A DNA stretch of 64,000 bases from Dimorphilus gyrociliatus (lineage: Eukaryota; Animalia; Annelida): contig CAJFCJ010000012.1 of NCBI GenBank assembly GCA_904063045.1, forward strand, positions 1,984,001 through 2,048,000, in the 5' to 3' direction. Made by a program: the position numbers and the translations under genes. The number at the start of each line of letters is the position of its first letter. Positions within the stretch are counted from its first letter, which is position 1. The notes beneath the pieces are model-generated. The model saw only the letters and a program-made list of their open reading frames with translations, did no database searches and was not told where the DNA came from. Positions 1-22,434 of this stretch are shown in pieces.

Positions 1-449
1 TATTTATTGAAAATTCAGACTCTTCTAAGATAGCCGGAGTAAGAGATGTTAATTTTGAGTCTATATAAGATTTTTCAGGATCTTTTGCTGCGCATACAGT
101 TTCGCAATTTATAACTGCAAAGTTATTATGCTCAGACAGCCAATTATTTGCTTTATCAATTAACTTCCTGAAATAGAAAATAGTGCCACTACTATATATT
201 AATTTAAATACATTATCAACTTGGATAATGGCCAATTTTTACTTACGAAAATGGCTCGTATCTTGTATTTGAGAATATATCATTATCCCTGATACAAACT
301 GGTAGAAAATCCATAAAAGTAACTCTTATATTAGGTATTGAGAAAGGAATTTGATGGAGTGCAATATCATTAGCGTGTGTCCGTACAACTTCGTTGTAAC
401 TTGGAGGTGGAAAATATTCCATAGAGGAACTTCTCGGTATAGAAAACAT
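1..449 (-). CDS. Array paralogue A (PPxY / 4-repeat family), 5' part only; runs off the left edge of the window
   Basis: Exon 1 encodes EYFPPPSY...VTFMDFLPVC...YEPFS. A GT-AG intron spans 246-168. Exon 2 encodes KLIDKANNWLSEHNNFAVINCETV, matching the other paralogues. The likely start is the ATG at 422 or 449. Confidence 0.85.
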
Positions 450-880
450 CTTCTATTATTCAAAGCTTTGGCTGAAATTCGAAAAAGAAGAACTAATTAA
501 CAATTATTCAGTGTTTGAATGGAATTTTAACATATCATTGCCTCTTTTATTGTAGTCATTCAATTCAATAGTATATAAGTAACAATTATTACGTGCTAAT
601 TAATTAATACTATGAGGAGAGGACATAATTTTTGGTTAACAATTATACCGATCTAGAAACAAATGCAAAGAGAAAGAAGGAGAGAAGTAAGAAGATGGAG
701 ATGGGGAATAGGGAATCCTTAAAAATTTATCATTTAAGTCTATTAAAACTTTAATTGACAATGGTTTATATATAAGCTAATAGAAAACTGATTCATACAT
801 TTTATAGGATAAAAAATCGTTCTTGAGTAATACTTACGATTGTAAAAAATAGAGAGACCTAGACTCATCAGCTTAGTAAC

Positions 881-890
881 ATCACGTGAT
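881..890. promoter_or_regulatory. Palindromic E-box ATCACGTGAT upstream of paralogue A
   Basis: 10-bp palindrome about 430-460 bp upstream of the A start, at a position similar to the GTCACGTGAC upstream of paralogue B. Confidence 0.35.
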
Positions 891-1106
891 TGTTGTTTGG
901 CTCCTGTTCCATGTTCGAAAAGTTACTAGTAGTACGTAATCTCTCTATTAGCTTCTTTTTTAATAAAAATTTAATAGATATATAAATTAAACAGTTAATT
1001 TATTATTTAATTTATTCATTTGAATATAAAAGCATTTAAGTAAAGGAAGTAAACCAAAAAACAAAATGGCAAGGTTTTCGTTACTCTAATGAAAGAAAAC
1101 ACAATT

Positions 1107-2836
1107 TCACAATAAACAGCACTCTTCGGCATCTTCGTAAATGCGAGGATGATTTGATAAAGGTATATAACCAGGGGGAGGTTCAGTGACAAGACCTTCA
1201 AAGAATATTCTAATACATGATATATAAGCATAGACTTCTGAATCCCCAGTGTAGCTTTGCATATCGTCGACTTTGGCTTTATATAAATAAGGTAAGGTTT
1301 CAGCATTTATAATCTTTGCCTTGGAATTATATTGAAGAAAAGGAAATATCTCTCTTCTTAATAAACTACTCATTGTCTCGAAAGTAGGTGAGCGTCCTTT
1401 TGCAGTTCTCGATTGTAATGCAGGTAGAAATGTTCTGCAGCTAATTGTAAAATCAGGTCTGGGTTCAGCATCAAAAGTACGAGTAAAGTATATTCTTATA
1501 AATCGAACATATGGCTTCAATGTATATTTAGTTCTAAAATATCCAGGATCGTAGGCTACATCTTCTCTTTTAGCTATGTTTATCATTAATGAATATTCAT
1601 ATAAATATTACAGTATACTGTAATATAAATTATTTACATACCTTTATTAAAGCTAACTTGAATGGTTTGTAAATTCAATATATTTATAAAAGAATTTGTT
1701 CTAACCCATGTTTGAATTCGAGACATTAAAGAGGTAAATGATTCATGCTTTCTGAAGTAAAAGCATGAACTATTCTGTATAACTGCTGGAATAAAGTCGG
1801 CGTTTTCTTTTCGTATGAAAAAAATAATATGATTTTTCAAATTTATTCTCTTTTAGTGAAATAAATACTCAACCAATTGGAATTCTAGGATCAGCCGATT
1901 GTCCTCTTATGTAATAGACCATCGTACATAAAGGAACGTGAAAGATTTTATCAGAATCTTCGTATTGCTTTAATCTGGTAATATTTAGAAAGTAGATAAG
2001 AATTAATGAATATTCATTAAGTTCATTTGAATATTTTTTGTAAAAGTAATATAATTTTACAAACTCTTCTGGATTTTTTTCTCTATTTAATCCAATCCTT
2101 TCAACATTATTAATACGACCTTCGACTGGACAAGCTTTATTTGTTGAATTAAATTTAATTAGTGTGTCATCATACGAATAATACGAGTATGAAGATGGCA
2201 TGGATTTATCTCTATTGGTGGGTTGAATGCAAGTATGACCAATCTGGTCGGCTTCTAGTGGCTCCCCTGGATTTTTTGATCGAAGATAGACTCTTTTAGG
2301 AAAAATAAAAGAAAAATATATCTCTTTATTAGCATTACAATACAATACGATATGATTACTTAAGCTTACCTAAGAAATTTTACTAAATTAAGATATTTAT
2401 ACTCAGTAGAAACTTCACCATTCTGTTCAGTTCTTGTTTGTGGAATCTGATAAGATTTATCTGTTTGTAATGGAAGAGATACGCCATCTTTTTGACAGCA
2501 CAAAACTTCACAATTTATAACTGCAAACGTTGCATTTTGCGCAAGCCATTCATTAGCTTCTTTAATTAGGATGCTAAAAGTAGAAAACATATATCAAGAA
2601 GCATTATTTAGAATGACAAACAACGTCAAATTTGTTTGTTTTGCATACCAAAATTTTTCATATTCGCATTTAAAGAATTTATTTTTTTCTATAAGACAAT
2701 TTGCTGTAAAATCGATAAACGTAAAGCGTAGATCTGATCCAGCTGATCTTAAAGATTGATTTGGATAGGAATTTTCTATTCCAGCTCCTTCGGCACGAAT
2801 AACTTCTTCGTAGCTTGGTGGTGGTGCATCAACCAT
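1107..2836 (-). CDS. Array paralogue B; PPPSY N-terminus, CCLL C-terminus
   Basis: Starts MVDAPPPSYEEV...FIDFTANC. Later exons carry ANEWLAQNATFAVINCE, GRINNVE, ADFIP..FTSLMSRIQTWV and REIFPFLQYNSKAKIINAE..IRIFFEG. Ends DAEECCLL* (TGA 1107-1109). Confidence 0.88.
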
Positions 2837-3185
2837 TCTGTTCTACTTTTGCTTCTTCCTCTTCCTCTTCTTTTTCTTCTATTTTTTCCTCTCTTCTATA
2901 TTCCTCCTTTGTTTTATATGTATCTGATTTTCGAATAATTCATTAATTTGCAATCTATCCAATTGATTTACAATGGGTTCGATTACAATTTATATGTATT
3001 CCTATTGAAAATATTATAAATAAGGTGACAGATGCCCTAAAATCAAATTTATCAATAAGCTATCATCCTGATTCTTTGTTTTAATATCTATATAGAGAGA
3101 GTTATTTATTTAGAAAATCGCAATGTATAAGACTCGGTTGTACAACACTTACCAGCCTATCTAGGAATTGATTCAATTTCATTTG

Positions 3186-3195
3186 GTCACGTGAC
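3186..3195. promoter_or_regulatory. GTCACGTGAC (CLEAR-type E-box) upstream of paralogue B
   Basis: Exact 10-bp palindrome 350 bp upstream of the B ATG; matches the established MiT/TFE CLEAR consensus. Confidence 0.4.
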
Positions 3196-4587
3196 ACTCT
3201 GGCTACAGGCTCCAGATTTTTTCAATTCTTTTCTCTTTCTCATAGATAAAATACTACTTTTTGTTTAGTTAATATATTTTTTGCAAAGAAGTGAACAACA
3301 AGCGAATCAAGTTTATTTATTAAAATAACTAAAATGTTATTAACATTAAGTGTATAGAAAGTGTACACAATTTTTAAGGTATTGCGCAATATTATCCAAA
3401 ACAATAACAAAAACAAAACAGATAATTTACATTCTCAGATAACGATATGGAATAGTAAAAACTTTTGTTTAGATAAAGTAAAATTATTGAGGAAAACATG
3501 GAAGAGAAAAGGTTGAAGGATATTGTTTCTTTTCTAGATTCGTAGGACTTTTCTCTCTCTCTATATATACATGTATATATATATACAGTATACAGTATAT
3601 ATATATATATATCTTAGTAATTTTCAATACACACATATATATGTATTGTATGGAAATAGAATACTTCTCTTAGCTCATATTCATCAAAGTAAATTTAATT
3701 CTCTTTTACAATTACTGGTACAAAACGTTTTAATTGTTAAAACAAATTGTAAGTTCCTTCAATAGACCTATTAATAGCTACGTTTAACTGGAAATGGTTA
3801 AAAAGTCTTCTATTTTAAAACGGTTACAGAAGAATTGATAAATATCTTTATTATTATAATAAGCAGATACTGCAAGGATTTCTGCAGTATATTGTCCATT
3901 ATATGAATAAATATTATATGTAATCTCTGTAATATATAGGTGAAACTTAAAGGAAGTTCAAACTATTGAGTTTTATTACGCCAATTCAATAATAAAAGGA
4001 ATAAAAAGAAATCTAATTTAGATTAATGACTAAAAGTTTGTCAAGTATCAACATCCATCTTATGAACTTGAATAGCTGGGTACTTTGAATTTTTGATTTT
4101 TAATAAAACTTTAGTGTTAAGTACGTTTAGATTGAAAATCAATAAGTAAATATTGGGAGAAACTCAAATAAATATTTGAGGATAATATTGATTACTCAGC
4201 CAATCGTACAAACTTTTAAAATATCCAATTCTTAGATGTATAAGTCATTTTTTCCCCCTATTTAAACTCTGATTCATATTGCTTTTCTGCTGTTGTCATA
4301 GAGAAGAGAGAGAGAGAGAGAGATAGAGGTATAAACTCTTTCAAGCATTTTAATAAATATTACTTTATCGACGAGATAATACTGTGAAAAAAGAATAGCT
4401 TAATTATAAACAGGCCTAGGAATTAATTAATATTAAAAAGGAATAATTAATTAACGTAATAGAAAAAATTGTTTATTGAATGACATTAACAGTGATTAGA
4501 GTAGAAAGAAAAGGAATATATTAATAAGTTAAATATTTAAACAATGTTATGACAGTTTTCTTTTTCAGTCATAGGCGACAATAGATG

Positions 4588-5600
4588 TTAGATATAACCG
4601 AGTAGAGAATCTTCTATTGTTCCGTTAAAGTATACCCCTTAAACACAATACTAAACAGTAATCATATAGGAGAACTCCAACTTTAGGGAACAACTTCAAA
4701 ATTGATGACTTCCGCTTTAGAATTATAGCATAGAAAGAGTATTATTTACCTTTTGAAGGAATACATCCGATGTTTCGTATCCATCATAATAGTTTCTACT
4801 TTCCTATATAATAACAGGATTAGAAGTCACATATATTAAATCTATCTATCTTCTAATACGAATACTACTAGATTTTTGTAAGATTATTTAAATATAATAA
4901 ATGTCTATGTGGCAAGCCAAAGTCTTAATCTATTCATAATTGATAGTAAATTTTCATATTCATTGCATACATTTAAACCATTTCCTTTTAATATATAGAG
5001 AATAAATTATTCAATATACTTAAATAAAACTTGAATTTATTCATATAAAAGATAAAAAACCTATTCTTTTACCTATTGGACAATCGTGTAGGAAAGAGAG
5101 TCGAGTATGCATACATTCAATACAAGAATCAATTGATTCGTAGAATTCTGTTCTTTAAAAAGAATAAGAAAACAGATTAATAAATAAAATATGAATAAAT
5201 TAATACAGCTTTACTACATTTCGGAATCTGTGAGAGTTAATTGTCCATTCAATTCAATAGTTTAAATATTCAATATTTTTCCAGATATTTGATATGCTTG
5301 GAAATATTTATTTAATGGCTATAGTGTATTTTTTTGAGTGAAAATATCCTATCTTCTTTCTTTGATTATCCTTAGGAGAATATCGAAAAATCCTTTGCAA
5401 TTGGCTTGTTGAGAGTCTTTTACCTGTTTTCTTTTGATGTATAATCTTTGTTTATAGACAGTATATATGTATTTATTTTTACTAAGGAAGACCTTGATAT
5501 CAACTATTTACCTTAAAGATTTAATTATATTAGGTGAGAAATTATCTTCTGAACCGTCATTCGGTTCTACTTCGCCTTTTAAGGTACAGGGCTAGATTCC
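4588..5600 (-). pseudogene. Degenerate array paralogue (psi-1), absent from the ORF track
   Basis: Manual minus-strand translation gives SPNIIKSLR|gt, IGYF, SGKILNI*TIEL (TAA 5262-5264), EYENLLSIMNRLRLWL, YNSKAEVINFEVVP* and VYFNGTIEDSLLGYI*. All are collinear with family motifs but broken by stops and frameshifts. Confidence 0.8.
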
Positions 5601-5710
5601 TTCATCAAACAAAACTAAAAAGCTAATTAATTACATAGATATATGTATTTAAATAGTGTATTTGAAAAATTTGTAAAAAATCCCAGTAACAAAATAATAA
5701 CATACTCTTT

Positions 5711-7327
5711 TTACAGTATATTACAGTTTTTAGATGTCTCCACCTCCTTTGGATGCTGTACATTTCCTAAAACAATTGCTGGCGGTTCTTGAATAGTTCC
5801 ATGAAAATATATTCTAACACTTGAAATTAATGTAACATATTTAGTTGGAGGAAAAATTGGTATTATTTCGAAATTGATCACTTTTGCATTAGAATTATAG
5901 TTGATAAATGGTAATATTTCCCTTTTATACAATAAATCAAAAGTTTCATATTCATCCGAGTTTGTTGGTTTATTGACAGTAATAGCTGGAGTAAAATTTC
6001 TCCATGTCAAATTAATAGGCTTATAAGTACAAGAACCAGGTTCACTTGCGTAGAATACACGAATTATTCGAAAATGTGGAGTTAGAGCGTACTTTGATTT
6101 TATATATTCACACTTTTGAGATGCACCAGTTTTTAATGCTAAATCATGATTATAAGAAATGAATATGAACAGTTGAAAACCTATTTAAAACGGTTTTTAC
6201 CTCCTCTATCGTCTACATTAATAGTTTGTATGTTTGTAATTCTTATTCCGGTTTGAGATTTTACCCAATTTCTAACTTTTACCAATACTACTTCATCAGT
6301 TTCGTAGTCATTTGAAGAGCAGCATCCTCCCACTTTAGTAATAGACGGGATAAAATCTTTACATCCTAGAGAGAAAGAATACTATTAAAATGAATGTTAA
6401 ACACTATGTAGGAAGTAAAAACCAACCGATACTTTCCCGGGAAGATTGTCCCTGTTGTAGAAAGTAGACACGTAGAATGGATAGTTTATGTTCAGTACTA
6501 CTATTATCTTCTTGAAATCCTGTTCTATAGAGATGTTAAATTAATTTTGAAGGAGGTTATCCTTAATTAATACAACCTATCTTCATTATAATGGTGTCCA
6601 TCTCTTGGAATACTTATATTCTCCATATTAAGAATTTTTCCAGGAAAAAAGCTGTCTTTTAAAGATTCGTTAAAGTTTTGCATTGTTTTATTAAAACTTT
6701 CAAATTTTGGTTCAGTACAGCAGCCGCTGGTTATCATTTCAGGTATAGCATTGATATATGATATATGATTTGAGTCCATAGGCTCATTATTCGTTTTAAA
6801 TCGAACGTATAATCTATTCATTTTATATGAATAAATTAAATAAATTATTAGACATGTTTAGTTTTGAATACCTCAAACAATAAACAATATCTAGATCGTA
6901 TTTTACGTAACCACTATGAGAAATTTCATTAACGTTGAATTTGGTTGATTGAGAATTTACAGCCGTTCCAATATCAACCTTTGAATCTCTAGTTACTCCA
7001 AAAGTTTCGCATTGATCTACAGCATAGTGATCATTTTCTGTTAGCCATTGATTTGCCTTTTTCACAAGTTCTCTGATAATTGAAAGAAAACAAACAATTT
7101 TACCTTTAAACAATGAATACACCACATATATATACTGTATATATATATGCTTATAGGTCAGATTAATACCGGAAATCCTCGAATTTTGGTGATGAAAAAA
7201 TTTTACTACTTTGTGTACAAATAGGTACAAAATCAATATAAAACCTATCCATAGCAATGTTAAATTCTTCACGATTGAAACTAATCCTCGCTGTACTATC
7301 CTTAAATAATAAGCCAGAAGTAGTCAT
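5711..7327 (-). CDS. Array paralogue C; no PPxY, CNIL C-terminus
   Basis: ATG 7327 starts MTTSGLLFK...FYIDFVPICTQSSKIFSSPKFEDFR|gt. Later exons carry ANQWLTEND, PGKILNME, GCKDFIP..VRNWV and REILPFINYNSNAKVINFE. Ends SKNCNIL*. Confidence 0.85.
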
Positions 7328-8158
7328 CGCCTGATAATCTTTTGATATTAACGTTAATACAGAGAGGTGTTTTGCGTTTTCAAGCGGTTTGTTAGGAAAT
7401 AAATGAGAGAAGGGGGAAGGGCTGTTGTGCGAAGGATTTATTTAATTATAACAAAGAGAAAATATGGCCAAAGATTTGACATGAATTGTCAAGCTCTATA
7501 CCACGTATTGTACACAATTTACTGATTAAAAGGAAGGTTTAATGCTTTTTTCTAAATTATTAATACTATATACAGAGAGATATTGTGGCTTTTCAATAAC
7601 ATTTTTAAATAAGTGCCGTTAATCTCAATAGAAAAATCACTTTTACTAAATTGTCAATTAACACATTACAAACAGTAATGGTCTAATAGAGAGGGTAAAA
7701 TAATAGTCTTTCTCTTATATTCACTATCAAGGCTCTTCATAGGGGTAAGATTTATGAATATATCAAATAAGATATTTTGCAGAAAGCGTCCTTGTAAAAC
7801 TCTTTAAAAAAATATTATTTCCACTGACCTTGTGAATATTCATGTTATTCAATATGACTTTTTGGGGAAATTATACGTCATCTATTTTCGTTTGTCATTT
7901 TTTCTCTGAAAATTCCAATTAGGCATAAATTGATATAAGTTTCTTATTTAAAGATTTATGGTTCTATGAATTCTTATAAAAGTAATAGTATAAACATTTT
8001 GTCATGATAAAGAGAGTATCATTTGTTACTACGCTGTTCATATCTTTTAAACCTTAGATTTTATGTCTGCTTATGATAGTAAAATATCCTTAAACATTCT
8101 TTATTAATCCACATATTTTATTCTCTTATTCTGAATATAAACTGTTCTTAAGGAATTA

Positions 8159-9634
8159 ATGGATTCACCACCATCGTATATTGAAGCTATTTCCGCTTAT
8201 TTTAAGTGTAGATTCGTTGATTTCGCACCTATATGCATAAAAGGTAAAGATCTATTTTCGCCACCAAAATATGAACCATTTAGGTTTGTAACTTTTTAAC
8301 TGTTTATAAATAGTTTTTAAAATTGCCCTTTATCGTAAATTATAGCTAATTAATAGGAAAAGCTAATCAATGGTTAAGTGAACTTCTTCGTTGAAGGATG
8401 TGAAACTATTGTAGTAAAACGAAAACCAAAAGAGAATTGCTACAGTTGTCATTATTAAACGTTTAAGATAGTTTTGATTAAATTATTTTTCGATTAAAAA
8501 CGAGTTAAGAATCAGACGAACCACATCAAATTGGATATTTAAGCATAATACCACAGCTTATCTCTTCTAAAGGACTGTTTAGTATTGCAAAATACGATAG
8601 TTATGATAAAGCTCTAAATGATTTTCACAACATAATCCTGAATAAAAATCCAACACCTGGAAAGATTCTTAATATTGAAGTTGTTGCTATAAATAAAAGT
8701 ACCAATGATGTAGAAGACGCTGATGGGTAGATTAAATTCAACTAGTTTATAATAATATAGTTTAAATATAAATTGCACTTAACAGAAGCCTTCTTGCAGA
8801 AGATGCTAAGCCTAACGGATTTGTATCAACAATTTTTAGACTGTTTTATTTAAATGGACCTCGTTTATATGAGAAAATTGGTCTTTTCAATCAATTTCGT
8901 CCTTTTATTATTCTAGTAAACAAAGCGTTATCCCATTTACTTAGGATCGGCAGATTTTCGTCCTGCAGTCATTACTCGGGGTGGAATTTTTTCGAAGCAT
9001 AAATTTTAAACATTATCCGACACAATACGAAAACCAAATGGATGGATTTCTTCTCAGAGAACACTTCGAGTAACCAATTTACAAACACTCAATATTGATT
9101 ATAGTAAAGGTTATAAACAAACCATAATATTTTAAAATTTATATATTTATTTATTCTTCAATCATCTATACAGCATTGAAGTCAAACATCACCGATAGAA
9201 TTGATTATACGCTATCTAAACATTCTTTAGGATATTTTTTCAATGTTATTAGGGTATTCTATGTTACTGGACAAGATAGTCGAGTTGATTATCCCATTAA
9301 TGTATCGTGTAGAGTGTTTCTGCCTGCGGTATTGGTTACAAAACTGCTTAATCGTCATGTTTTTGAAACATATGATGAATTGTATTCAAGAGAAATCTTG
9401 CCATTCATAACATATAATTCACATGCTAAAGTTATTAATTATGAAATTGTTCCTGCATATCCACAAGACGATCCACAAATTATGTCTCATACGAGAATAG
9501 ACAAAGGCGCAGTTCTGATAGTTGCAAGCGTGAGAGTGTATTTTAATGAAAATATAAGAGAACCGCCTATCGGCGTTATCCAACCTAAACCAATTCCTAT
9601 TCGCGAAGATGCTGGCCGTTACTCTATGTCCTAG
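8159..9634 (+). pseudogene. Array paralogue D, pseudogenised
   Basis: Exon 1 (MDSPPSY...DFAPIC...YEPFR) is intact. Lesions: in-frame TAA at 8347, 8506 and 9007; an ~8-nt frameshifting deletion near 8383 relative to paralogue G; donor changed to AT at 8468; terminal Cys residues lost (ends GRYSMS*). Confidence 0.85.
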
Positions 9635-10403: not shown

Positions 10404-12116
10404 TTATGTAATTACGCATGTTTTAGATACTGTAGATTTTGGTAATGCTGGCTTAGGGGATGGTGACGTTGTTGGCAGAGTTTGTAATGGAGTTGATGGT
10501 GGTGGAGCTTGTGATGGGGTAGTTGATAGCGGTGGAGGTGATGGTGAGGGAGTTGGTGGTAGGGGAGTTGGTGGTAGGGGAGTTGGTATTTCATAATAGC
10601 CAATTGGAGGTTCTTGAATTCGACCGTCAAAATATATTCTAACGTATTTCACTAATGTTAAACTTTTCCTATTTTTAGAAGACATGGTTTCACCATCTTC
10701 AGAAGAAGATATGTAGATTGGTACCATTTCTATATTTATTATACCAACGGCCAAATTATAGCGAATAAATGGTAAAATTTCTCTGTTATACAACGTTTCA
10801 AAACGTTCGTATTCATCCATATCCAATGATTTTTTTACACAGCAAGGTATGAACACTCTATAAGTCAGAGATATTGGCGTTTCAAGAGGCGTCGTTAGAG
10901 TAGTATAATAGACTCTAATTACTTGAACATAAAAAAGTGTACAATATTTTGATTGGATATTTTGCGTATTATCATTTATATCAGTACTTCCAACTGCCGA
11001 TTATTTTAAAGAGATTGTTAATATATTTCTGAATTTATAATATATATTTGATAAACTATTACCTTTATCATATTCAACGAAAAGCGTTTGTACGTTTATC
11101 ACACGTATATTCAATTGCGAACTAACCCATTTCGATACTTTTTCCATAGTTTGTGAAAAGTTCTCGTAAATGTGATTTCCAAATAAAAAATCATTTTTAA
11201 TTCGTTTCGGTACAAAATCTTTACATCCTGAAATATTTATCTATATAAATATCTTTAAACAGTTTTATCTTTTCACTCTCTTACCAATTTGCTCTTTTGG
11301 ACATTCAACATTTTCGTAAAATATCCTTATAAAGCTATTCTTTGGACGAAATTTACTTTTTTCACTTTCCTCAAATGCTACGCTATTGAAAATTGAAAGA
11401 AATAACAAAGAATTTCTATTAGATTATAAACGCTCAAAAATATTAATATATATATTTACCCATCATAGTTTGTATCGATAGTATCTATGTAGGCAACTTG
11501 GGTTTCCATATTTAGAATTTTTCCTGGAATCAGTTCACTTTTCGAAGTTGTATTAAATCGTTTTATAGCTTCAGTTATATTCTCCGGTGTTTTGTTCGAC
11601 CATAATAAAGATAGCTTTAACTTTGGAACTAAGTTATAATATCCTATTTGACTTGGTATTTCCGATTCATTTTCATCCTTGAATCGATAGTAGATGCGTA
11701 AACAATTAACTATTTTACAGGTTGGATACTTCTTTTTATCTTCGTCACCTTGAACGAGAAGTTTACAGTAGTCTGGATTAACTGTTGTTCCAATATTGTA
11801 TGATGCATTTGGCAGAGTTGCTCCAATACTTTCGCAACCCGTTACCCTATACATGTTTTCAGTACGTAACCATGCGTTAGCATCATCTACCAAATCACTA
11901 AAAAAACAAAAGTATATTGCTTGAAAAACAATGAAACGATTGTTAATTTTAATATTAAAACCTAAGTGATTGGTATATAGTTGCGGAGAAATCATTTGAG
12001 TCTTTTATACATTTAGGAATGAAATCCTTATATAAACATCTGAATATGTTTACTACAGCAGATCTTGCCATCATATCGACAAGGATTTCTGCATTGTCTC
12101 CAGGCATGTCAGACAT
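10404..12116 (-). CDS. Array paralogue E; no PPxY, Pro/Thr/Ser-rich linker before a CVIT C-terminus
   Basis: ATG 12116 starts MSDMPGDNAE...YKDFIPKC..YQSLR|gt. Later exons carry ANAWLRTEN, PGKILNME, GCKDFVP..VSKWV and REILPFIRYN. Ends SKTCVIT*. Confidence 0.85.
10547..10587. repeat. 15-bp coding tandem repeat (about 2.7 copies) encoding PTPLP in paralogue E
   Basis: The unit ggggagttggtggta is repeated directly. Confidence 0.8.
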
Positions 12117-12588: not shown

Positions 12589-14255
12589 ATGTATAGTTTT
12601 GCATCGTTTAACGAAGTAACTACTACCAATGATAAAAACATTACATATGTTGATTTTGTACCCTCTTGTACAAAAAAATCTGGCATCGTTTCAAAGTCCA
12701 AGTTTCAACCATTTAGGTTTGCTATATGCTTTTCTTTATTATCAATAATTATTAATTTCTCTTTTACTATTCTAATATAGCGAATTGATGAATAAGGCTA
12801 ATAAATGGTTAAATGAACATCCTAATTTCGCTGTTAAAGGGTGTGAAACAATTGGAAGTAGTGTAAGTTCAGAACAAGCTGTAGGAGAATGTACCGACAC
12901 CCAGAAAACAAACTATCATATAAAAATAACAACACGAACTCACAGTCAAGGTAATACGACCACACATACTTACATTTTCAACATCTGGATTCTGAAATGT
13001 TTAAGGTATTTTATCAGTTTGTTTTATAGAAGTAAAACTGTTGAGTTATTAAGGATTTCTTTTACATATAGGCTACATATTCAACCGAAAGGAAGTGACG
13101 AATCACCCGAACCTCATCAGATAGGATCTTTACATATTATACCAGATCTTATCTCTGAAAGTGGAATTCTTAGTAAAGCAAAATATAGCGCATATAGTGA
13201 TACACTGAAAAAAGCCAATGAATATGTGAATAGAAACCCCATACCTGGAAAAATTCTTAATATTGAGGCTGTTGCCATTAAAAGAAAAAATAATAAGATA
13301 AAGGATGACGGGTAAATGTATTACTAGTATAGTTTCTAAAGTCTATACTTATATTCTACTTTACAGGAGTTTACTTTTCGAAAGTACTGAAGATAATGGG
13401 AACTTGACCACAATGTTTAGAATATTCTATTTAATTGGACGTCCATTATACGAGAAAATAGGTTTGTTTTTTTTTTTAACATAGAACCTCTCTAAGCTGA
13501 TTAAAAAAAGTGCTTTGTTTCGAAATGATGAATTTACATTAAAAAACTAGTATATCCTATTATTCTCTTCCGAAAGGTTCACAAGATTTTTTTCCTGAAA
13601 TAATTAAAAAAAAAGGATTGTTTTCAAAGAATAAATTTGGAACATTTTCCCCAACATTTGAAAATGTAAATAGATGGGCTTCATGTCAGACTTCAATCCG
13701 AATCACAAACGTACAAACTCTAAATATTTCCTCTGATAAAGGTACCAAACAATTATGTTATACTCTGAAATGTATGAACTACTATATAATCTATCGTTTT
13801 TAGCATTAAAGCCAAATATCAGTGAAAGAATTGATTATATAGTACCTAGACATACGATACGGGACTACTTCAACATCATGAGAGTATTTTATGTTACTGG
13901 ACCAGATATTAGAATTGATTATTCTATTGGTATATCGTGTAAGGCATTTCAACCTGCTCTATTGATGTGGAAATCTTCTGTAAAGAATACTTTTGAAACA
14001 TTCAAAGAATTTTATGTTAGAGAAATTGTACCATTCATATCATACAACTCACATGCTCAAATCATCAATTTTGAAATTGTTGCTAAACCTATGAATGAAG
14101 ATCAAGAGTTGATGAGCCCTAAACGAGTACCACCAAAAATTTTAACAGCAGAAGTAAGAGTATACTTTATCGGACCTGTAAGCGATCCTCCACCAGGATA
14201 TATACAGCCTAAACCAGTTCCAGTTATCAAAAAACAAAGTTGCAGTATTTTATAG
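12589..14255 (+). CDS. Array paralogue F; no PPxY, CSIL C-terminus
   Basis: Six exons join in frame across GT-AG introns: TYVDFVPSC..FQPFR, ANKWLNEHPNF, PGKILNIE, QDFFP..VNRWA, REIVPFISYNSHAQIINFE. Ends KQSCSIL*. Confidence 0.88.
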
Positions 14256-14693
14256 AAAGAGTGCATTTTAAAAATTTTACTGTTGTTCTAATTTATACCT
14301 TCAACGAAAAGTGTGTCACTGGTTGAATGATGCATAATACTTTAATATGTTGTTTTTTAATACATCGTATAGAGATATCGTCACTATATCATTCCATTTT
14401 TGTCTAATTTCATTTATTTTATAATTTTCATTATTCTATGCATTCGATGGGAAACTTCATGGAATAAATTACTCATTTCCGCCAGATGACGCTAACATAG
14501 ACATATAAACAGTATACAATATATAAACCAGCTGAAATATAGCCTTATCGTCCGTGTTTTAGTCATACTTGTAAATATATTTTTGGTCTACAAAAATTCA
14601 ATACTTAACAATGCTACATATTATTCTTCTTATTCGCAATATCATCCGATAATTACTAAATTGCGCATAAATCGAAAAATCTTCCTTGAAACT

Positions 14694-16510
14694 ATGGATG
14701 CTCCCCCGTCATACAACAAAGCTACTGCAAACGATATTAATTTTGAGTTCTGCAACAATGATCAAAACGTCACATACGTAGATTTCGCACCAACATGCAC
14801 CAAACCAAGTGGTATATTTTCATCGGCCGAATATCAACCATTCAGGTTTGTCACTTTATTTACCGATGACTATTAATCTATCTTAATCTATCTTCTGCTA
14901 TTTTATACAGCGAATTAACAATTGCAGCTAATAAATGGTTAAACGAGCATTGTAATTTCTTTGTTGAAGGATGTGAAACAATTGGAGCAACTCCACTTCA
15001 AACTAGAAACATCGGAGAGGTTAATACACAAGAAACAAGATATCATATACAAATTAGAAGACGTCAGGGAGGCAGCAAACAGAACAATTCCAGAATCGCA
15101 GCCATTAACGTTATTAAATGTTTGAGGTACTTTTAATTCGTAGTATATTATAATGAGAATATTTTCATAATTAAAGATTCATTTTGAAATATATAGATTA
15201 TACGTTCGACCTAAAGGAAGCAATGAATCACCTGAACCTCATCAAATTGGATATTTAAATATTTCACCTCAACTGATCTCTCCTACTGGAATTTTTAGAT
15301 TGGCAAAATACGATTCCTATGACAATACTCTAAAAGAGTTTAACCTATTTTTGGATAAAAATCCCATACCCGGAAAAATCCTTAATATTGAAGCTGTTAC
15401 TATATTTAGAGATGATAATAATATAGCTGCTGATGGGTAAGTTAAGTAGTAATATGAATTAATGACTATTACAACGTGTATTGTATTCAATTTTTAGGAG
15501 TCTTCTTACAGAGACAAGCCATTATTACACCAGTTTATCAACAATGCTTAGAGTATTCTATTTGAGTGGGCCTCCATCATACGAAAAAATCGGTTTGTCT
15601 TAGCTCATTCATACATATAGTTTCAATTCTAAACGTTAAGATTAATTCAAATTCATTAAATAATTATTTATAAATAAATTATTAATTAATAGAAACAAAC
15701 AATTATTATCTAATTATACTTTCGTCCATTGTTAAGAATTTTTAGGCTTTCAACATCTCTATTTATGGTTTATATAAGTAACATCTTCTATTTGATAGGA
15801 TCAGCGGATTTTCAACCATCAATAGTTAAACCTGGAGGACTTTTATCAAGACATCAATTTGAAACGTTATCTGAAACAATGTGTAAAGTAAATACTTGGC
15901 TCTCCTCCCAGATGGAAATTAGAGTAACAAACATACAAACACTTAAAATTAACTATCATAAAGGTAATAAAGACTTTTAATAATATTATTTTATTAATAT
16001 CTATTTTCGGATAGAGAGATTTGTTTACTTTATCATTTTTTTCTTTCAGCATTAAAGCCAACCATCACTGAAAGAATCGATTATGTTCTTTCCAGACATT
16101 CTTTACAGCAATTTTTCAATATCGTAAGAGTGTTCTATACTACTGCACCAAATAGTGGAATTTGCAGGCCTATAAATCTGTCGTGTAAAATATTTATACC
16201 TGCTGTTTTGGTGACGAAGATGATTGGTCTTGATGTCTATGAAACCCTTGACAATCTGTATTCAAGAGAAATCTTACCGTTCATAAGATATAATTCACAC
16301 GCTAAACCTATCAATATTGAAACTCTTCCTCTAAATCCGCAAGAAAATCCGGAAGCAATGTGCAGTTCAAGATCAGTTGAACACGCACCTTTGATGATAG
16401 CAACTGTTAGAATATACTTCGATGGAGTTATAAATGAACCTCCAAGTAATGTTATGCAACCTAGACCGATTCCTGTCCACGAAGGCATCAGTTGCTGCTC
16501 TATTCTATAG
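14694..16510 (+). CDS. Array paralogue G; PPSY N-terminus, CCSIL C-terminus
   Basis: Starts MDAPPSY..TYVDFAP..YQPFR. Later exons carry ANKWLNEH, PGKILNIE, ADFQP..VNTWL and REILPFIRYNSHAKPINIE. Ends ISCCSIL*. Confidence 0.9.
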
Positions 16511-17596
16511 ATATTAGTGTTAAAGTTGTATTAACGCAATCTGTAGCTGAATATATATTGCTAGTTAGAAAACTGCATAAGTTTTGTGAACATTAGCTGT
16601 GAAATGACAGAAATGTCAAATTGCCTATGCAAAAGTTTTATTGTGGCTTTCCTTAATTATAAGGGTTACTTCAAAGAGTTATGTATATATACAGTATATA
16701 TAAATTTTATATATCTATTTTTACATATATACCTTTTTATTATGATATTGAAATACAGAATTAATGAATTCATAAAACTTCTATGGCTCTAGCTAATAAG
16801 AGCCATCTGTTGGTTTAGAAATTTCTTTTAAAGTTCCTGTAAGAATACTATTGACAGATGGTATATAATATATACTGCAAATAGTATACTTCTGGTCTAA
16901 ACTATATGCCAGAATGAGAAGAAATAGATAAACTACTTATTATACTGGAATAAAAAGAATAATATAAATATTCATAAGGTCGATGAAAGGAGTATTTAAA
17001 GAGAATGAATGGTTGCTATTTTTCTGATCTTTGAAAAGTTTGTTATAAAATTTCTAAGAAAGCTCACAAACCTCTGGAGAGTATGTTTTTGTAAAAAAAG
17101 AAACATACAGCATCTGTATAAAGATGTAACCTATATATTGGTATATATATATATATACTCCCTAACTATAGTAGGTTTAGCCGATAAACTAAAGTAGGTT
17201 ATTGGATTATTCTATTTTATCTTTTTCGACCCTTAAATCGATTTTCTCCCCAATACATAATCCATTAATATATGATATTTATAGAGAAGAAGACAAACAA
17301 GTTTTCTTTAGAGATTACGTAGCTAAGATAAATAGAAGAGTTAATATAAAAATATCAAAAGTTGACTGAGGTTTTTATTACTTATCTATCCATATGTGTT
17401 TTACGGTTTGCCTGTGGATTATTAGATAGGTAAGTACAATAAGCAACAAAGACGAGTATACATTTATATAATATAATAATGTATTATAAATATATACAAA
17501 AACATTTATTAAATTGCATCTTATTTGCTTTTATCTTTCCCTTTTTGTTGTTCTCTTCTTCCTTCCTCTTCTTCTTTTTCTATTATCAGAATAAAG

Positions 17597-19336
17597 TCAT
17601 AGAATGACACAATTTTTACAAAGACTTGCAGGACTGGCAGGAGGTTCTATAAATCCTTTTGGTGGTTCTTCAATAGGACCATCAAAGTAAACCCTTATAC
17701 ATAATACATACACGTGCTGTAAATTTGTTAATGAGACCATTTGTTCAGTTTTTATCTTGTAAAAATAAGGTACTACTTCGTAGTTTATCACTTTAGACGG
17801 AGAATTAAATCTAATGAAAGGTGCAATTTCTCTATTAAAAAATAGATTCGTTGGTTCGTAATACGAACAGCCATTTCTCTTTTTTAATAAAACTGGAGGG
17901 ACGAATGTCTTATACGTTAAATTAAAAGGTCTTTCAATAGATCCTTCTTGCCTTGTAACGTAGTAAACCCGAATTATCCTAAAATAATAACCCAAAGAGT
18001 ATTTTGATCTTAAATAATCAATTCTTTCAGTGATATTAGATTTTTGAGCTAAATTTAAAAGGAAATAAATAAGAAAACAGCTCATTAATCGGATTATTAA
18101 TACTATATATTGAAGATACTGTTACCTTTTTTATGACAGACGTTTATCGTTTGAATATTGGTAACTCTTAGAGAATTTTCCCAATACATCCAATCTTGAA
18201 CTCTTGCCATTGTTGAAGATAAATTCTCGAATTTACAAAATCGAGATTCTTTGTCAATCTCTAGTATTCTTGGTATGAAATCTTTGGAACCTTTATTATA
18301 AATGTTTATAAATTTATTCAAATTTATTCATAAATATAATTGATAACTAACCTATAGTTTCGTGTAATGAATATCCATGGAGATAAAAAACTCGAAAGAA
18401 CATTGTACTCAATTTAGGCTTTTCAGAATTTTCACTTAATTTAGATCTATGTTTTTGTTCGTTAATTGGTTAATTAATATGAATAAAAATAAGGTTACAA
18501 TTTTTGCTTACTCATCAGTATTTTCCGAATTTTCTACTCTATTTGAGGCAACTGTTTCTATACTTAGGATTTTTCCACCTATTGGATGGTCTTTGAGGAA
18601 TTCATTGAATTTTTTTAGAGAACTGTCATAACTTTCAAATTTTGGACCAGAAAAGATATTATGAAGACTAATGATTTTGGGAATAAAGTCTATATAACCA
18701 ATTTGATGAGGCTCTGGAGGGTCTTCTTTAGACTTCAATTGTACATATAATCTATAAAATTTAGGCATATACAGTATATGTACACACAGACGAATGTAAA
18801 TAAACAAATATCCATAAGCCTATATCTTTATATAGAACTATATATTAAATATAATAAATACAGTTTGTTATACCGTAAACACTTGACGATATTTAATTCG
18901 TAGTATTCTCTATGCGGGCATTGAAAAGGATCTGTTACGTGATAGGCCATCATTGTTGTTAATTTTGAATTTAATTCTAATCCACAATTATCTTTATCAT
19001 TTTTTACAACTGCAATAGTTTCGCAACCAACAACCGCAAGATCGCTATTAATTCTTAACCAATGATTCGCTTTTCTAATAAGTTCACTTTAATAAAGTTA
19101 TATTGGAAAAAAAAAAATTATTATCCGATTAAGTTTCTTTAATTAATAGTTTTCTAAATTACTTACTTGAATCTTTCAAATTTTGCAGATTTAAATTTCC
19201 TTGCACTATACGTACAAGCTGGAATAAGGTCGACGTAAGAGATAAAAGGATTTGGACCATCTGGCTGATTATTACGAGCATTTCTATTGACATTCTGTCC
19301 AACTGCAACGTCATAACTGGGTGGTTCATCTTCCAT
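17597..19336 (-). CDS. Array paralogue H; PPSY N-terminus, CVIL C-terminus
   Basis: ATG 19336 starts MEDEPPSYDVAV..SYVDLIPAC..FERF|. Later exons carry ANHWL, GGKILSIE, SKDFIP..VQDWM and REIAPFIRFN. Ends LCKNCVIL*. Confidence 0.88.
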
Positions 19337-20029
19337 GTCCAAATCGTTTCTGAGAAAAGTCGTAATTTGAATTTCAATATGGCGGCAGACGTAGGAGGTA
19401 TAAAAAAATCAATTCTGTTTGGTCCTAAATGTTACAGTAAATACCCTACGCGAAAAAATTAGGCCTATTCACTAGTTTGTAAAACATTGCGTACAGTAAC
19501 TTTATATAAAGATATCAAAGAAACGATTGAAAGGATTTGATATTTGATAGTAAATACATGTATTAAATGTTCAAATAATTAACAGGAATGTTAAACAGAA
19601 GAGAATTATCGAATAAATGAAGAAGAAGACTTTTAATCTGCAATATCATCTTCTCAAGAGCATTGCGAAATCATTTGCATAAAAGAAACACATATGCTCC
19701 TGAAATCAATTAATATAAAAAGAAACACATGCTCCTAGAATCAGATGTAGGCTAAGTGCAGTTGTTGAGAAGTTTTAAAGTTCAATCAACGTCGACTTAG
19801 GGATAATCAGGATCTGGTGTTGGTATACAAATTGCCTGGCTCATTAGGTTCAATGACCTACTTTATAGGTAAAAAAATAAGAAACATTTCTTTTTCCTAT
19901 ATAACTTAAAGTTTAAATTACAAGCAAGCAAACTTTTTGAACAGTTTAATCAATTATTTATTATACTCTTATTCTCTTGTTACACATCCGTTTTCAAGCG
20001 AAAACATATTGCATATATGGATTTTATTT

Positions 20030-20707
20030 TCACTTATCTTCGTATAGAACGGCGTCTATTGGCATATCATTATCAGTTGTTGGTATATCATCAAATATCT
20101 GTTCTTTAAACGCTAAGGCAATTGTTATTGGTCTTTTTTTAAAAATTGATTCGTAATTCTTTAAATAGTTATCGTAATAGCCTTTTCCTCTTCCGCAACG
20201 TTTTCCAGTGGTAGTAAAAGCCAAACCAGGAATAAGAAGCAAATGCAATCCGCCACTATCGATAGCATTGTTACGATTATCGTCAGATTTGGGTTGTTTA
20301 ATTTTCCAAGAAGTCTCTGGAAGTTTATCATAATCTTCCATTCCGTATAATTCAACCATATCCATATTTGGTCCGTCGTAACGAGGTATAAAGCATTTTT
20401 TGTTATTTTTAAATATATTTGATAAAATCACCTCTGTTCTTATCTCATCAGACATACTGAGAAATACGCATATACGTTCGCTATTTTTAAATTCGGCGCG
20501 TTCTATTAACTGGTAAAAAATTGTCGTTCAATGAGTATCTGGTCTTATATATCTTAATATAATTTTATAGCTTTTATTTATTACCTTTTTTGTAACGATT
20601 TCTGATTGTCTTAACTTTTCGCTTTCCGATAAAGCAAGTATTCTACTCTTAATTTCCTTTCTTAAAGCTTTTTTTGCGGCAAAAGCTAAACTATTCGCAG
20701 CCGCCAT
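20030..20707 (-). CDS. MTHFS: 5-formyltetrahydrofolate cyclo-ligase (methenyltetrahydrofolate synthetase)
   Basis: Two exons. Motifs KKALRKEIK, FLSMSDEI, SWKIKQP, LLIPGLAF, RCGRGKGYYD and IALAF..Q..D..ID..LY are characteristic of the family. Confidence 0.95.
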
Positions 20708-20858
20708 CTTTTAAATGTAAAATATTACTTTAAAATCTAAAAAACTAAAAATTTTAGTCTCGTAAAAAAATCTATTTACGAGTTTTCATTCTTTTATTAG
20801 AACATAAATGTCGAACAATAAAAAAGTTTGCAATATCATTAATATATGTATAGTATTT

Positions 20859-22434
20859 TCACATAAGAGAACATTCACTTTCTTTATGAGATTTTAGAGT
20901 TTTTAAATTTTTTTCCGGAAGTTGCGAAATTGGTCCTCTAAAAAATATCCTAAAGGATATCAAATATTGAATATAATCGGGTGTTAATATACCAAGCATA
21001 GAGTCATGCTCTGTCGCTATGGGAATTGTTTCAACGTTTAAAATATCTGTAGAACAGTTGTGTTTGATGAACTTCGTAATTTCATTTTTATATAATTGGT
21101 CCGTAGTTTCGTACAAATTTTTTCCAAATGCCTTCTTAACGGTAATTTTAGGTATAAAAGTCTGGCAAGATAAATTTACCGGAAGTTCACATTCCGGAAT
21201 ATAATATACTCGAAGAACACGAACAAAATGTTCCATAGGTACATCACTTTTAAAATGTTGTATATTCTGAGTATTAACCTTCTCTTTACCTGTATAGGTG
21301 AAATTTTTGTCATTAATTATCGAATTATTGATATACTTTAATGTTGAAAAATTTTAAATTTACCATCATAAATATCAAAGCTAAAATTTATAGTTTGAAT
21401 ATTTGTTACTTTAATGCCTTTTTGAGATGAAATCCATGATTGAACTCTGTCGACAACGGAAGATAACTTTTCTACTTTGCCAAGAGTCAATGCTCCTGGT
21501 TTTCTAATGAGATTTGGGGGAAAATCTATTGATCCTAAAAACATAGACAGATAAAGATAATAACTATAGTATAATATGCAAATACTATGAATATGAAACT
21601 ATTGTAAATTCAATTTCCGTACCTAGTTCTTCGTGAGCGGGCTCTCCTTGAAGATAGTACAATCTTAATTGAAAGCTGTTCGATCCTCCAAAAGAATGTT
21701 CTCTCATCCTACAACTAGTTTATTAAAGGAGAATTAACAAACGTACAAAAGTATTAATATGAAATTTTGTCAACTTACTCTTCAGGATCGAATGATTTTT
21801 CTGTTCTATAGAATCCAAGAGATTGAACACATAATATTCTACCCGATATAGGCTGTTGCTTTAAATATTGATTCAAACTTTTTAATGTATCATTCCAAGA
21901 TGAAAATTCAGGATATGAAAATATTCCAGCTTCTTTTAATATCTCTGGTAGAATATTTAAATATCCAATTTGATCTGGTTCTGCCGAATCCAATGAACAC
22001 TTTGGCTTTAAATGAACTCTAATAATAATAAGTGAACAGGGAACGTGAAATATTAGTTTTTTTATACGATTTATTCTATATTAATTACCTGAAACATTTT
22101 ATCACATCTATATAACGATCTTGCAGTTTGGTTATATTTAGGGATGGTGTTGTTCCAGTTTCTAACACAGTTTTCTTACAATTAACTATTCCTTTCTTTT
22201 TTTCAGATGGCAAATTTACGCTAAACGTTTCACAACTGACCACTTTTAATTGGCTGTTAACTCTTAGCCAGTCATTACATCTTGATACTAAGGTTCTATT
22301 AATAAAAATTTCCTTATAGGATATTGGAGAAAGTTAACAATTGAAACAAACCTAAAAGATTCATATTTAGGCATGCGAAAATAACTACTATCCTGTATAC
22401 AAGCCGGTTTGAAATCAATATACGTATAACTCAT
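20859..22434 (-). CDS. Array paralogue I; short N-terminus, CSLM C-terminus
   Basis: ATG 22434 starts MSYTYIDFKPAC..YESFR|gt. Later exons carry the repeat-1 helix, GRILCVQ, SIDFPP..VQSWI and FIPKI..YETTDQLY..ILNVE..FRIFF. Ends ESECSLM*. Confidence 0.85.

What the first reader, a model, noticed from the sequence alone, without database searches (positions are those of the whole stretch)
1..22434. Tandem array of about 10 genes encoding an uncharacterised prenylated four-repeat protein family
Seen in sequence: eight coding copies (A partial, B, C, E, F, G, H, I) and two pseudogenes. They lie in mixed orientation, share a 6-exon layout wherever exons could be traced, and are strongly diverged in protein sequence. 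Every complete intact copy ends in a CaaX box, and about half begin with PPxY. I recognise no named family. Inference: a lineage-expanded set of membrane-anchored adaptors or sensors evolving by birth and death, which could link a novel domain to WW-domain (NEDD4-type) ubiquitin ligases. This is the best candidate for an undescribed system in the window.
Basis: partly seen in the sequence, partly recalled or inferred. Interest (0 to 1): 0.9.

Follow-up and report, generated by a model that had tools for sequence, protein, structure and literature searches.

The report
Expanded array of lipid-tailed adaptor-like genes
This small marine worm carries eleven neighbouring copies (nine intact, two decayed) of a gene family found across invertebrate animals but never studied; its proteins look built to sit on the inner face of membranes and recruit partner proteins.

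Summary
Window 1-22434 (Dimorphilus gyrociliatus) holds eight coding copies and two pseudogenes of one family. One more intact copy lies just left of the window, where an RNA polymerase gene ends the array. Seven complete copies splice into intact ORFs of 405-481 aa. Public RNA contigs confirm every intron of G, four of F and the last-exon boundary of H.

Each protein has a disordered N-terminus (PPxY in about half), four homologous ~90-110-aa alpha/beta repeats that fold into one compact body (AlphaFold2 pLDDT 89.7, pTM 0.89), a Pro-rich tail and a CaaX box.

The family is not worm-specific. Members with the same architecture, and with four shared intron positions in the two deuterostome genes checked, occur in annelids, molluscs, brachiopods, bryozoans, priapulids, tardigrades, chelicerates, hemichordates and amphioxus. 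All are labelled uncharacterised, with no Pfam or PDB match. Only the expansion is lineage-specific: the eight copies tested form one clade and evolve fast but under purifying selection.

The only named structural neighbour is vertebrate Raftlin, itself lipid-anchored. That link is weak (TM below 0.5, no sequence support).

My reading is a prenyl-anchored scaffold that presents WW-domain ligands; this function is inferred, not shown. First readers of this scan noted the same array in overlapping windows, not on other DNA.

The parts
1..449 (-). Copy A, partial in the window (exon 1 and part of exon 2); N-terminal PPPSY. The full gene continues left of the window and ends in CCNVL.
   Evidence: window coordinate = 7300 minus L001 coordinate
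1107..2836 (-). Copy B, 6 exons, 450 aa; N-terminal PPPSY, C-terminal PPGY and CCLL.
   Evidence: the ortholog in L002 is 69% identical, dN/dS 0.11-0.19
4549..5480 (-). Decayed pseudogene remnant (pieces of exon 3 and exon 6 with several in-frame stops).
5711..7327 (-). Copy C, 6 exons, 420 aa (public model 428 aa); no PPxY; ends CNIL.
8156..9634 (+). Copy D, pseudogene: frameshift and deletion in exon 2, truncated exon 3, stop in exon 5, no Cys at the end. The public annotation lists it as a 268-aa protein.
10404..12116 (-). Copy E, 5 exons (intron 2 lost), 481 aa; Pro-rich low-complexity insert before CVIT.
   Evidence: identical to the public model
12589..14255 (+). Copy F, 6 exons, 434 aa; no N-terminal PPxY, C-terminal PPGY, ends CSIL.
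   Evidence: four introns confirmed by spliced RNA contigs; the public model skips exon 5
14694..16510 (+). Copy G, 6 exons, 442 aa (= DgyrCDS9054); PPSY at residues 4-7, ends CCSIL. This is the protein that was modelled.
   Evidence: all five introns confirmed by one 1657-nt spliced contig; structure
17597..19336 (-). Copy H, 6 exons, 444 aa; PPSY at residues 5-8, ends CVIL.
   Evidence: RNA contig covers the last exon and leaves at its splice site
20859..22434 (-). Copy I, 6 exons, 405 aa; starts directly at repeat 1 with no PPxY; ends CSLM (farnesyl-type).

Best explanation
SHOWN
- The array is a lineage-specific tandem expansion: nine intact genes and two pseudogenes, counting the copy just left of the window.
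- The family is ancient in bilaterians and uncharacterised.
- Each protein has four parts: a disordered N-terminus that often carries PPxY, four homologous alpha/beta repeats packed into one rigid body, a Pro-rich tail, and a C-terminal CaaX box, often with a second Cys beside it.
- No copy has a signal peptide or a transmembrane segment.

INFERRED
- The proteins are made in the cytosol. They are geranylgeranylated (X = L in seven of nine copies) or farnesylated (CSLM) on the CaaX cysteine, and some are also palmitoylated on the neighbouring Cys. They therefore sit on the cytosolic face of membranes.
- From there the four-repeat body acts as a binding platform.
- The exposed PPxY recruits WW-domain proteins, most plausibly NEDD4-family ubiquitin ligases, to that membrane. 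This would steer ubiquitination and sorting of nearby membrane proteins.
- Copies that lost PPxY (C, E, I) would bind the same partners without recruiting a ligase.
- The weak whole-length resemblance to Raftlin, a lipid-anchored raft and endocytosis scaffold, fits this kind of role but does not prove it.
For: Gene models and expression:
- Gene models were built.
- Spliced RNA contigs match every G intron, four F introns and the H last-exon boundary.

Conservation of the lipidation and WW-ligand motifs:
- Cys at -4 occurs in 60 of 84 homologues, against a Cys frequency of 1.8%. X is L in 31. A CC pair occurs in 19.
- An N-terminal PPxY occurs in 24 of 35, against 1.4 expected from shuffles.
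- PPxY and CaaX are kept in the A and B orthologs of a related organism, while the B pair is only 69% identical with dN/dS 0.11-0.19.

Structure:
- AlphaFold2 gives pLDDT 89.7 and pTM 0.89. Residues 12-21 are below pLDDT 50 and the C-tail is lower than the body (72, then 52, for the last two 10-residue blocks), so the motifs lie in flexible ends.
- No hydrophobic stretch reaches transmembrane level.
- Conserved columns are one E and one R per repeat plus core residues. That is a structural pattern, not a catalytic one.

Raftlin link:
- Raftlin and Raftlin-2 are the only named hits above noise (Foldseek probability 0.80-0.98, 0.94 or more for four of the five, aligned over all four repeats; Atlas TM 0.47/0.44).
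- Raftlin is membrane-anchored by N-terminal acylation (bioRxiv 10.64898/2026.06.12.731942).

From general knowledge:
- CaaL boxes are GGTase-I substrates.
- PPxY is the group I WW-domain ligand.
Against: - There is no experimental evidence here for prenylation, membrane localisation or WW binding.
- Four of nine intact copies have no N-terminal [PL]PxY (the copy left of the window has LPSY there), so PPxY is not essential to the fold's function.
- Several tails are acidic and lack a second membrane signal, which would favour endomembranes over the plasma membrane.
- The Raftlin similarity stays below TM 0.5. It has no HMM support and did not reappear when the amphioxus member was the query.
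- The single repeat is a simple alpha/beta unit with no informative solved neighbour.
Confidence: 0.55

Rival explanations
1. The family is the invertebrate counterpart of Raftlin. It would be a true, very distant homologue that organises membrane microdomains and receptor endocytosis, with a C-terminal prenyl anchor where vertebrate Raftlin has an N-terminal myristoyl/palmitoyl anchor. The PPxY would be a secondary addition.
For: - Foldseek against Swiss-Prot models puts Raftlin-2 and Raftlin from five entries on top (E 3e-3 to 3.5e-2, probability 0.80-0.98), aligned across residues 25-427, that is all four repeats.
- Unnamed vertebrate clusters of raftlin-like length appear in AFDB clusters.
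- The ESM Atlas gives a Raftlin PF15250 cluster at TM 0.47/0.44 over 286 residues, well above the next unrelated row at 0.24.
- Both families are lipid-anchored cytosolic proteins.
- None of the family members I looked up is from a vertebrate.
Against: - TM is below 0.5 in both libraries.
- None of 43 members hits PF15250 even at E up to 10.
- No Gly2-Cys3 acylation site is present.
- The Raftlin cluster was not returned for the amphioxus member.
- Ten-kb flanks in amphioxus and Ptychodera showed no informative neighbours.
- Four tandem simple alpha/beta units could converge on a similar shape.
Confidence: 0.4
2. The proteins are fast-evolving defence or recognition factors. They would be membrane-tethered sensors whose four-repeat surface binds variable, for example pathogen-derived, ligands. 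The tandem expansion and divergence would reflect an arms race, comparable in logic to prenylated immune GTPases.
For: - There is a tandem array with birth and death and two pseudogenes.
- Paralogues are 24-52% identical.
- Between the two related organisms, orthologs are about 43-69% identical while the neighbouring RNA polymerase subunit is 90% identical.
- A fused tandem pair is also visible in a tardigrade model.
- Raftlin itself works in innate immune receptor traffic (from general knowledge of the Raftlin literature; not read here).
Against: - dN/dS is 0.11-0.19 between orthologs and 0.23-0.56 between paralogues, which indicates purifying rather than diversifying selection overall, although dS is saturated.
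- Most other species appear to have only a few copies.
- No immune-type domain is present.
Confidence: 0.15
3. The PPxY marks the proteins as substrates, not adaptors. WW-domain ligases would ubiquitinate them to control their own turnover or to sort them into multivesicular bodies or extracellular vesicles.
For: - PPxY lies in a disordered N-terminus.
- A lipid anchor together with PPxY is the layout of budding and sorting cargo (from general knowledge of viral late domains and ARRDC1).
- Raftlin was reported as an efficient extracellular-vesicle scaffold (abstract of bioRxiv 10.64898/2026.01.04.697584).
Against: - Nothing in the sequence separates substrate from adaptor.
- Copies without PPxY persist under selection.
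Confidence: 0.2

Closest known systems
Raftlin / Raftlin-2 (RFTN1, RFTN2; Pfam PF15250)
   Same: It is a cytosolic, lipid-anchored peripheral membrane protein. The structured region of about 400 residues aligns over all four repeats of the model (Foldseek probability 0.80-0.98; Atlas TM 0.47/0.44).
   Different: - There is no sequence or HMM similarity.
- The Raftlin anchor is N-terminal myristate/palmitate, whereas here it is a C-terminal CaaX.
- Whether Raftlin has a conserved N-terminal PPxY was not checked here.
- TM is below 0.5, and the hit was not recovered from the amphioxus member.
PPxY-bearing NEDD4 adaptors (Ndfip1/2, arrestin-domain ARRDC proteins)
   Same: These are membrane-associated proteins that expose PPxY motifs to recruit WW-domain HECT ligases. 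This is the mechanism proposed here.
   Different: Ndfip proteins are anchored by transmembrane helices and ARRDC proteins by an arrestin fold. Here the body is four alpha/beta repeats and the anchor is a prenyl group. No homology is implied.
CaaX proteins with an adjacent palmitoylatable Cys (for example H-Ras, RhoB, paralemmin)
   Same: A C-terminal Cys-a-a-X, often preceded by another Cys, gives a two-lipid membrane signal. CaaL endings resemble G-gamma and Rho-type GGTase-I substrates.
   Different: The globular part is unrelated, with no GTPase or other known domain.
Small bacterial and phage alpha/beta proteins (unnamed 90-95-aa clusters; DUF4177, DUF1737, Cse60)
   Same: A single repeat superposes on 90-aa bacterial hypothetical proteins at TM 0.71/0.75, and more weakly on DUF1737 and DUF4177 clusters.
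   Different: There are no HMM hits to those families. They are single-domain prokaryotic proteins of unknown function, so the match names a shape, not a function.

Membership tests
Raftlin (Pfam PF15250) | Sequence match to the Raftlin HMM | tested here: not met
   No hit in 9 full-length members at E up to 1, nor in any of 43 members at E up to 10.
Raftlin (Pfam PF15250) | N-terminal Gly2 myristoylation and Cys3 palmitoylation site | tested here: not met
   The N-termini start M-D-A-P-P-S-Y and similar. None of the array copies begins MGC.
Raftlin (Pfam PF15250) | Same fold over the structured region | tested here: inconclusive
   Foldseek probability 0.80-0.98 but TM 0.36-0.38. Atlas TM 0.47/0.44. 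Not returned for the amphioxus member.
Raftlin (Pfam PF15250) | Residence in detergent-resistant membrane or raft fractions | not testable with these tools
   Needs cell fractionation.
CaaX prenylation substrates | Cys exactly four residues from the C-terminus, with an aliphatic a2 and an X that fits FTase or GGTase-I | tested here: met
   All nine intact copies qualify: CCLL, CNIL, CVIT, CSIL, CSIL, CVIL, CSLM, CNVL, CQIL. The same holds for 60 of 84 homologues. CVIT is an atypical X.
CaaX prenylation substrates | Isoprenoid actually attached | not testable with these tools
   Needs metabolic labelling or mass spectrometry.
WW-domain (group I) ligand proteins / NEDD4 adaptors | PPxY in an accessible, disordered segment | tested here: met
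   Met for A, B, G and H. The copy left of the window has LPSY near its N-terminus and PPSY near its C-terminus. C, E and I have none, and F has only a C-terminal PPGY. The N-terminal segment is modelled as disordered. PPxY is enriched 24 of 35 against 1.4 expected.
WW-domain (group I) ligand proteins / NEDD4 adaptors | Physical binding to a WW domain and ligase recruitment | not testable with these tools
   Needs pull-down or peptide-array assays.
DUF4177 / DUF1737 / Cse60-like small domains | HMM match of a single repeat | tested here: not met
   None of 69 repeat segments hits these families at E up to 10. Only shape similarity was found, TM 0.45-0.52 by query.

The most novel reading that the evidence does not exclude
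This may be an undescribed, bilaterian-wide class of prenyl-anchored scaffolds that couple the cytosolic face of membranes to WW-domain ubiquitin ligases. It may also be the ancestral form from which vertebrate Raftlin arose, by moving the lipid anchor from a C-terminal CaaX to an N-terminal myristoyl/palmitoyl site. Its apparent absence from the usual model animals would explain why it has gone unstudied.
Probability: 0.25. Interest if true: 0.8.

Novelty: new variant of a known kind. Interest (0 to 1): 0.6.

Why it matters
- A protein family conserved from annelids to amphioxus, with a fixed and readable architecture (WW ligand, rigid four-repeat body, prenyl anchor), has no name, no Pfam model and no paper that I could find.
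- None of the members I looked up comes from a vertebrate, an insect or a nematode. That check was partial, but such an absence would explain the neglect.
- The family offers a new, directly testable candidate for how invertebrate cells bring ubiquitin ligases to membranes.
- If the Raftlin link holds, it gives Raftlin an evolutionary origin and a domain structure.
- The Dimorphilus array, with nine diverged paralogues, natural PPxY-loss variants and three kinds of CaaX ending, is a ready-made natural mutant series.

Tried and rejected
- Pfam scans of exon pieces, full-length proteins, 43 family members and 69 single repeats found nothing above noise.
- A profile search of PDB sequences gave one chance-level hit, E 0.24.
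- The word-indexed homologue search was too insensitive to add members or names.
- Literature searches for CaaX plus PPxY proteins, and for Raftlin structure or invertebrate Raftlin, found no description of this family.
- A microsynteny test for Raftlin orthology was uninformative. I recalled from memory that the Raftlin genes neighbour BOULE/DAZL and PLCL genes, and looked for such neighbours. Ten-kb flanks in amphioxus and Ptychodera showed only a P450, a DUF2615 gene and one unannotated gene, and the Owenia locus was withheld.
- I could not run a profile-profile comparison with Raftlin, because no tool gave me a Raftlin sequence and I did not type one from memory.
- Paralogue dN/dS is of limited value because dS is saturated.
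- Run X1 holds 0.73 of the sampled words of the C-D-E stretch. This is consistent with transcription there but does not show which copies are expressed, because the single read-laying run had already been used on F-G-H.
Full report
**Organism and layout**

The window is AT-rich (about 30% GC). It comes from the miniature annelid Dimorphilus gyrociliatus, as shown by the names attached to identical proteins and by earlier scan notes.

An all-against-all comparison of stop-to-stop ORFs shows six classes of exon-sized ORFs that recur in the same order ten times between 1 and 22440. tblastn with the spliced proteins finds nothing of the family beyond 22440.

**Gene models**

I traced G by eye and found six exons with GT-AG introns of 61-206 nt in phases 2, 2, 2, 1, 1. 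I then used its exon peptides and phases to model the others and corrected B, D and E by hand.

- B, C, F, G, H and I have six exons.
- E has five, because intron 2 is missing and exons 2 and 3 are fused.
- The seven complete in-window copies give intact ORFs of 405-481 aa.
- My G and E proteins are identical to the public models DgyrCDS9054 and 9052. H and C differ by one small splice choice each. The public F model skips exon 5.
- D is a pseudogene. It has a frameshift and internal deletion in exon 2, has lost the 5' part of exon 3, has a stop in exon 5 and has no Cys at the end.
- A second remnant at 4549-5480 keeps pieces of exons 3 and 6 riddled with stops.
- A runs off the left edge of the window.

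The contig beyond the left edge (L001) shows full-length A (ending CCNVL) and one more intact copy, DgyrCDS9047 (ending CQIL, with LPSY near the N-terminus and PPSY near the C-terminus). An RNA polymerase large-subunit gene follows and ends the array. The array therefore holds nine intact genes and two pseudogenes. A 5-formyltetrahydrofolate cyclo-ligase gene is nested between H and I.

**Expression**

One public run holds this DNA. Its contigs skip exactly the introns I predicted:

- All five introns of G are skipped, and a single 1657-nt contig spans the G mRNA.
- Four introns of F are skipped, including the exon 5 that the public model omits.
- A contig covers the last exon of H and leaves it at the predicted splice site.

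G and F are therefore transcribed and spliced as modelled, and the last exon of H is transcribed and its contig ends at the predicted splice site. The high share of words for the C-D-E stretch (0.73) is compatible with transcription there but does not resolve individual copies.

**Protein architecture**

The paralogues are 24-52% identical. Cutting the alignment into four segments and comparing their profiles gives hhalign probabilities of 73-98% (E 3e-5 to 7e-13), so the four repeats are homologous.

AlphaFold2 on G with a 43-sequence family alignment gives mean pLDDT 89.7 and pTM 0.89.

- Each repeat is strand-strand-helix-strand-(strands)-strand.
- The four repeats pack into one confident unit.
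- Residues 12-21 fall below pLDDT 50, and the last ~20 residues score lower than the body (block means 72, then 52).
- The N-terminal PPxY and the C-terminal Pro-rich tail with CaaX therefore lie in flexible ends.
- No 19-residue window reaches transmembrane hydropathy.
- The conserved columns are one Glu and one Arg per repeat plus core residues. The EPP at the start of the tail and the CaaX Cys are also conserved. This looks structural, not catalytic.

**The family beyond this worm**

A profile of the last exon, searched against 1.84 billion representative proteins, found 84 proteins at E up to 1e-3. Many are 400-500 aa with two to four matched stretches.

Name look-ups and AlphaFold DB clusters place members in these groups:

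- Annelids: Capitella, Owenia, Ridgeia, Lamellibrachia, Paralvinella, Helobdella
- Molluscs: Batillaria, Haliotis, Ostrea, Lottia
- A brachiopod, a bryozoan and a priapulid
- Tardigrades, sea spiders and mites
- A hemichordate, amphioxus and probably a tunicate

Every name is 'uncharacterized' or 'hypothetical', or an evident mis-transfer. The ESM Atlas holds a mollusc cluster (100 members) and an arthropod cluster (123 members) with TM 0.71-0.83 over the whole protein.

The architecture is conserved:

- 60 of 84 hits have Cys at position -4, against a Cys frequency of 1.8%.
- X is Leu in 31 of those 60.
- 19 have a CC pair.
- 24 of 35 members with an N-terminal extension carry PPxY there, against 1.4 expected from shuffling those N-termini.

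Intron positions in the amphioxus and Ptychodera genes map onto four of the five Dimorphilus introns, at G residues about 51, 123, 235 and 290. These are orthologous genes of ancient structure.

**Lineage-specific expansion and rate**

In a maximum-likelihood tree of 47 proteins, the eight Dimorphilus copies tested form one clade with SH-aLRT 100, on long branches.

A contig from another public sample (L002) carries a syntenic array ending at the same RNA polymerase gene.

- The polymerase is 90% identical in protein between the two organisms.
- The B ortholog is 69% identical and the DgyrCDS9047 ortholog is about 43% identical.
- The B pair has dN 0.21-0.23 and dN/dS 0.11-0.19, with dS saturated.
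- Its PPPSY, its C-terminal PPGY and its CaaX are all kept, and the A ortholog likewise keeps PPPSY and CCNVL.
- Paralogue dN/dS is 0.23-0.56, again with saturated dS.

The duplications therefore predate the split between these two organisms. The copies evolve quickly but under purifying selection.

**Comparison with known families**

No Pfam family matches exon pieces, whole proteins, 43 members or 69 single repeats. No PDB sequence matches. No solved structure matches the whole model or the single repeat.

Among predicted structures with names, Raftlin stands out.

- Raftlin-2 and Raftlin from human, mouse, orangutan and chicken are the top non-noise hits in Swiss-Prot models. E is 3e-3 to 3.5e-2, probability 0.80-0.98 and TM 0.36-0.38. 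The alignment runs from residue 25 to about 427, that is across all four repeats.
- Unnamed vertebrate clusters of raftlin-like length show up in AFDB clusters.
- The Atlas lists a PF15250 cluster at TM 0.47/0.44, against 0.24 for the next unrelated row.
- Raftlin is anchored by N-terminal acylation (bioRxiv 10.64898/2026.06.12.731942).
- Against the link: TM stays below 0.5, there is no HMM support, the acylation site is absent, and the amphioxus member did not retrieve Raftlin.

I treat Raftlin as a possible distant relative, at about 40%, and not as the family this belongs to.

The single repeat (model pLDDT 83) resembles 90-95-aa bacterial hypothetical proteins (TM 0.65-0.75). It resembles DUF1737 and DUF4177 clusters more loosely. 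That names a shape only.

**Mechanism**

The shown parts are the architecture, its conservation, its expression and its selection.

The inferred parts rest on general knowledge:

- CaaL boxes are GGTase-I substrates, and CaaM, CaaS and CaaQ boxes are FTase substrates.
- A neighbouring Cys is commonly palmitoylated.
- PPxY is the ligand of group I WW domains, as in NEDD4-family ligases.

Put together, the most likely reading is a prenyl-tethered scaffold on the cytosolic face of membranes that presents WW ligands. Paralogues differ in lipid type (seven CaaL, one CaaM, one CaaT) and in whether they can recruit a WW protein at all.

The rival readings are a substrate role for the PPxY, a raftlin-like microdomain role, and a fast-evolving recognition role. 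The data here do not exclude any of them.

**Verdict**

Two points of its interpretation need changing. The family is old and widespread, not lineage-restricted. It also has a weak structural neighbour in Raftlin. First readers of this scan flagged the same array in overlapping windows, and I found no note of it on other DNA.

Noticed in passing
window 13765-14297 (- strand): RNA contigs carry three minus-strand splice joints inside the last exon of copy F. Two are canonical GT..AG: 13765-13845 and 13990-14052. The spliced antisense product has no ORF of note, so it looks like a natural antisense non-coding transcript.
   Followed up: partly
window 20030-20455 (- strand): An exon matches 5-formyltetrahydrofolate cyclo-ligase (Pfam PF01812, E 1e-36). 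This unrelated housekeeping gene sits inside the array, between copies H and I.
   Followed up: partly
window 10404-10590 (- strand): Copy E has gained a roughly 60-aa Pro/Thr/Ser-rich low-complexity stretch (repeats of the type TPLPP) between the last repeat and its CVIT box. It has also lost intron 2.
   Followed up: partly
window 8156-9634 and 12589-14255: The public annotation lists pseudogene D as a 268-aa protein (DgyrCDS9051). It also predicts F (DgyrCDS9053) as 379 aa by skipping exon 5, which the RNA contigs include.
   Followed up: yes
L002:1-17900 (Logan contig of SRR23372228): This is a syntenic array of at least six family copies in a related, unidentified organism. It ends at the same RNA polymerase gene. 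It is useful for ortholog-by-ortholog rate analysis.
   Followed up: partly
P0027 (Paramacrobiotus metropolitanus, 648 aa): This tardigrade model reads through an internal CaaX-like ending (CVVI, followed by M) into a second copy. It therefore seems to be two tandem family genes fused by annotation, and tandem duplication may recur in other phyla.
   Followed up: no
G residues 224-234 (window about 15565-15592 and 15799-15805): A second PPSY lies in the tight turn between repeats 2 and 3. The family consensus there is G-x-P-x-x-E-x-I-G. It is modelled with high confidence, so it is probably structural and not a free WW ligand.
   Followed up: partly
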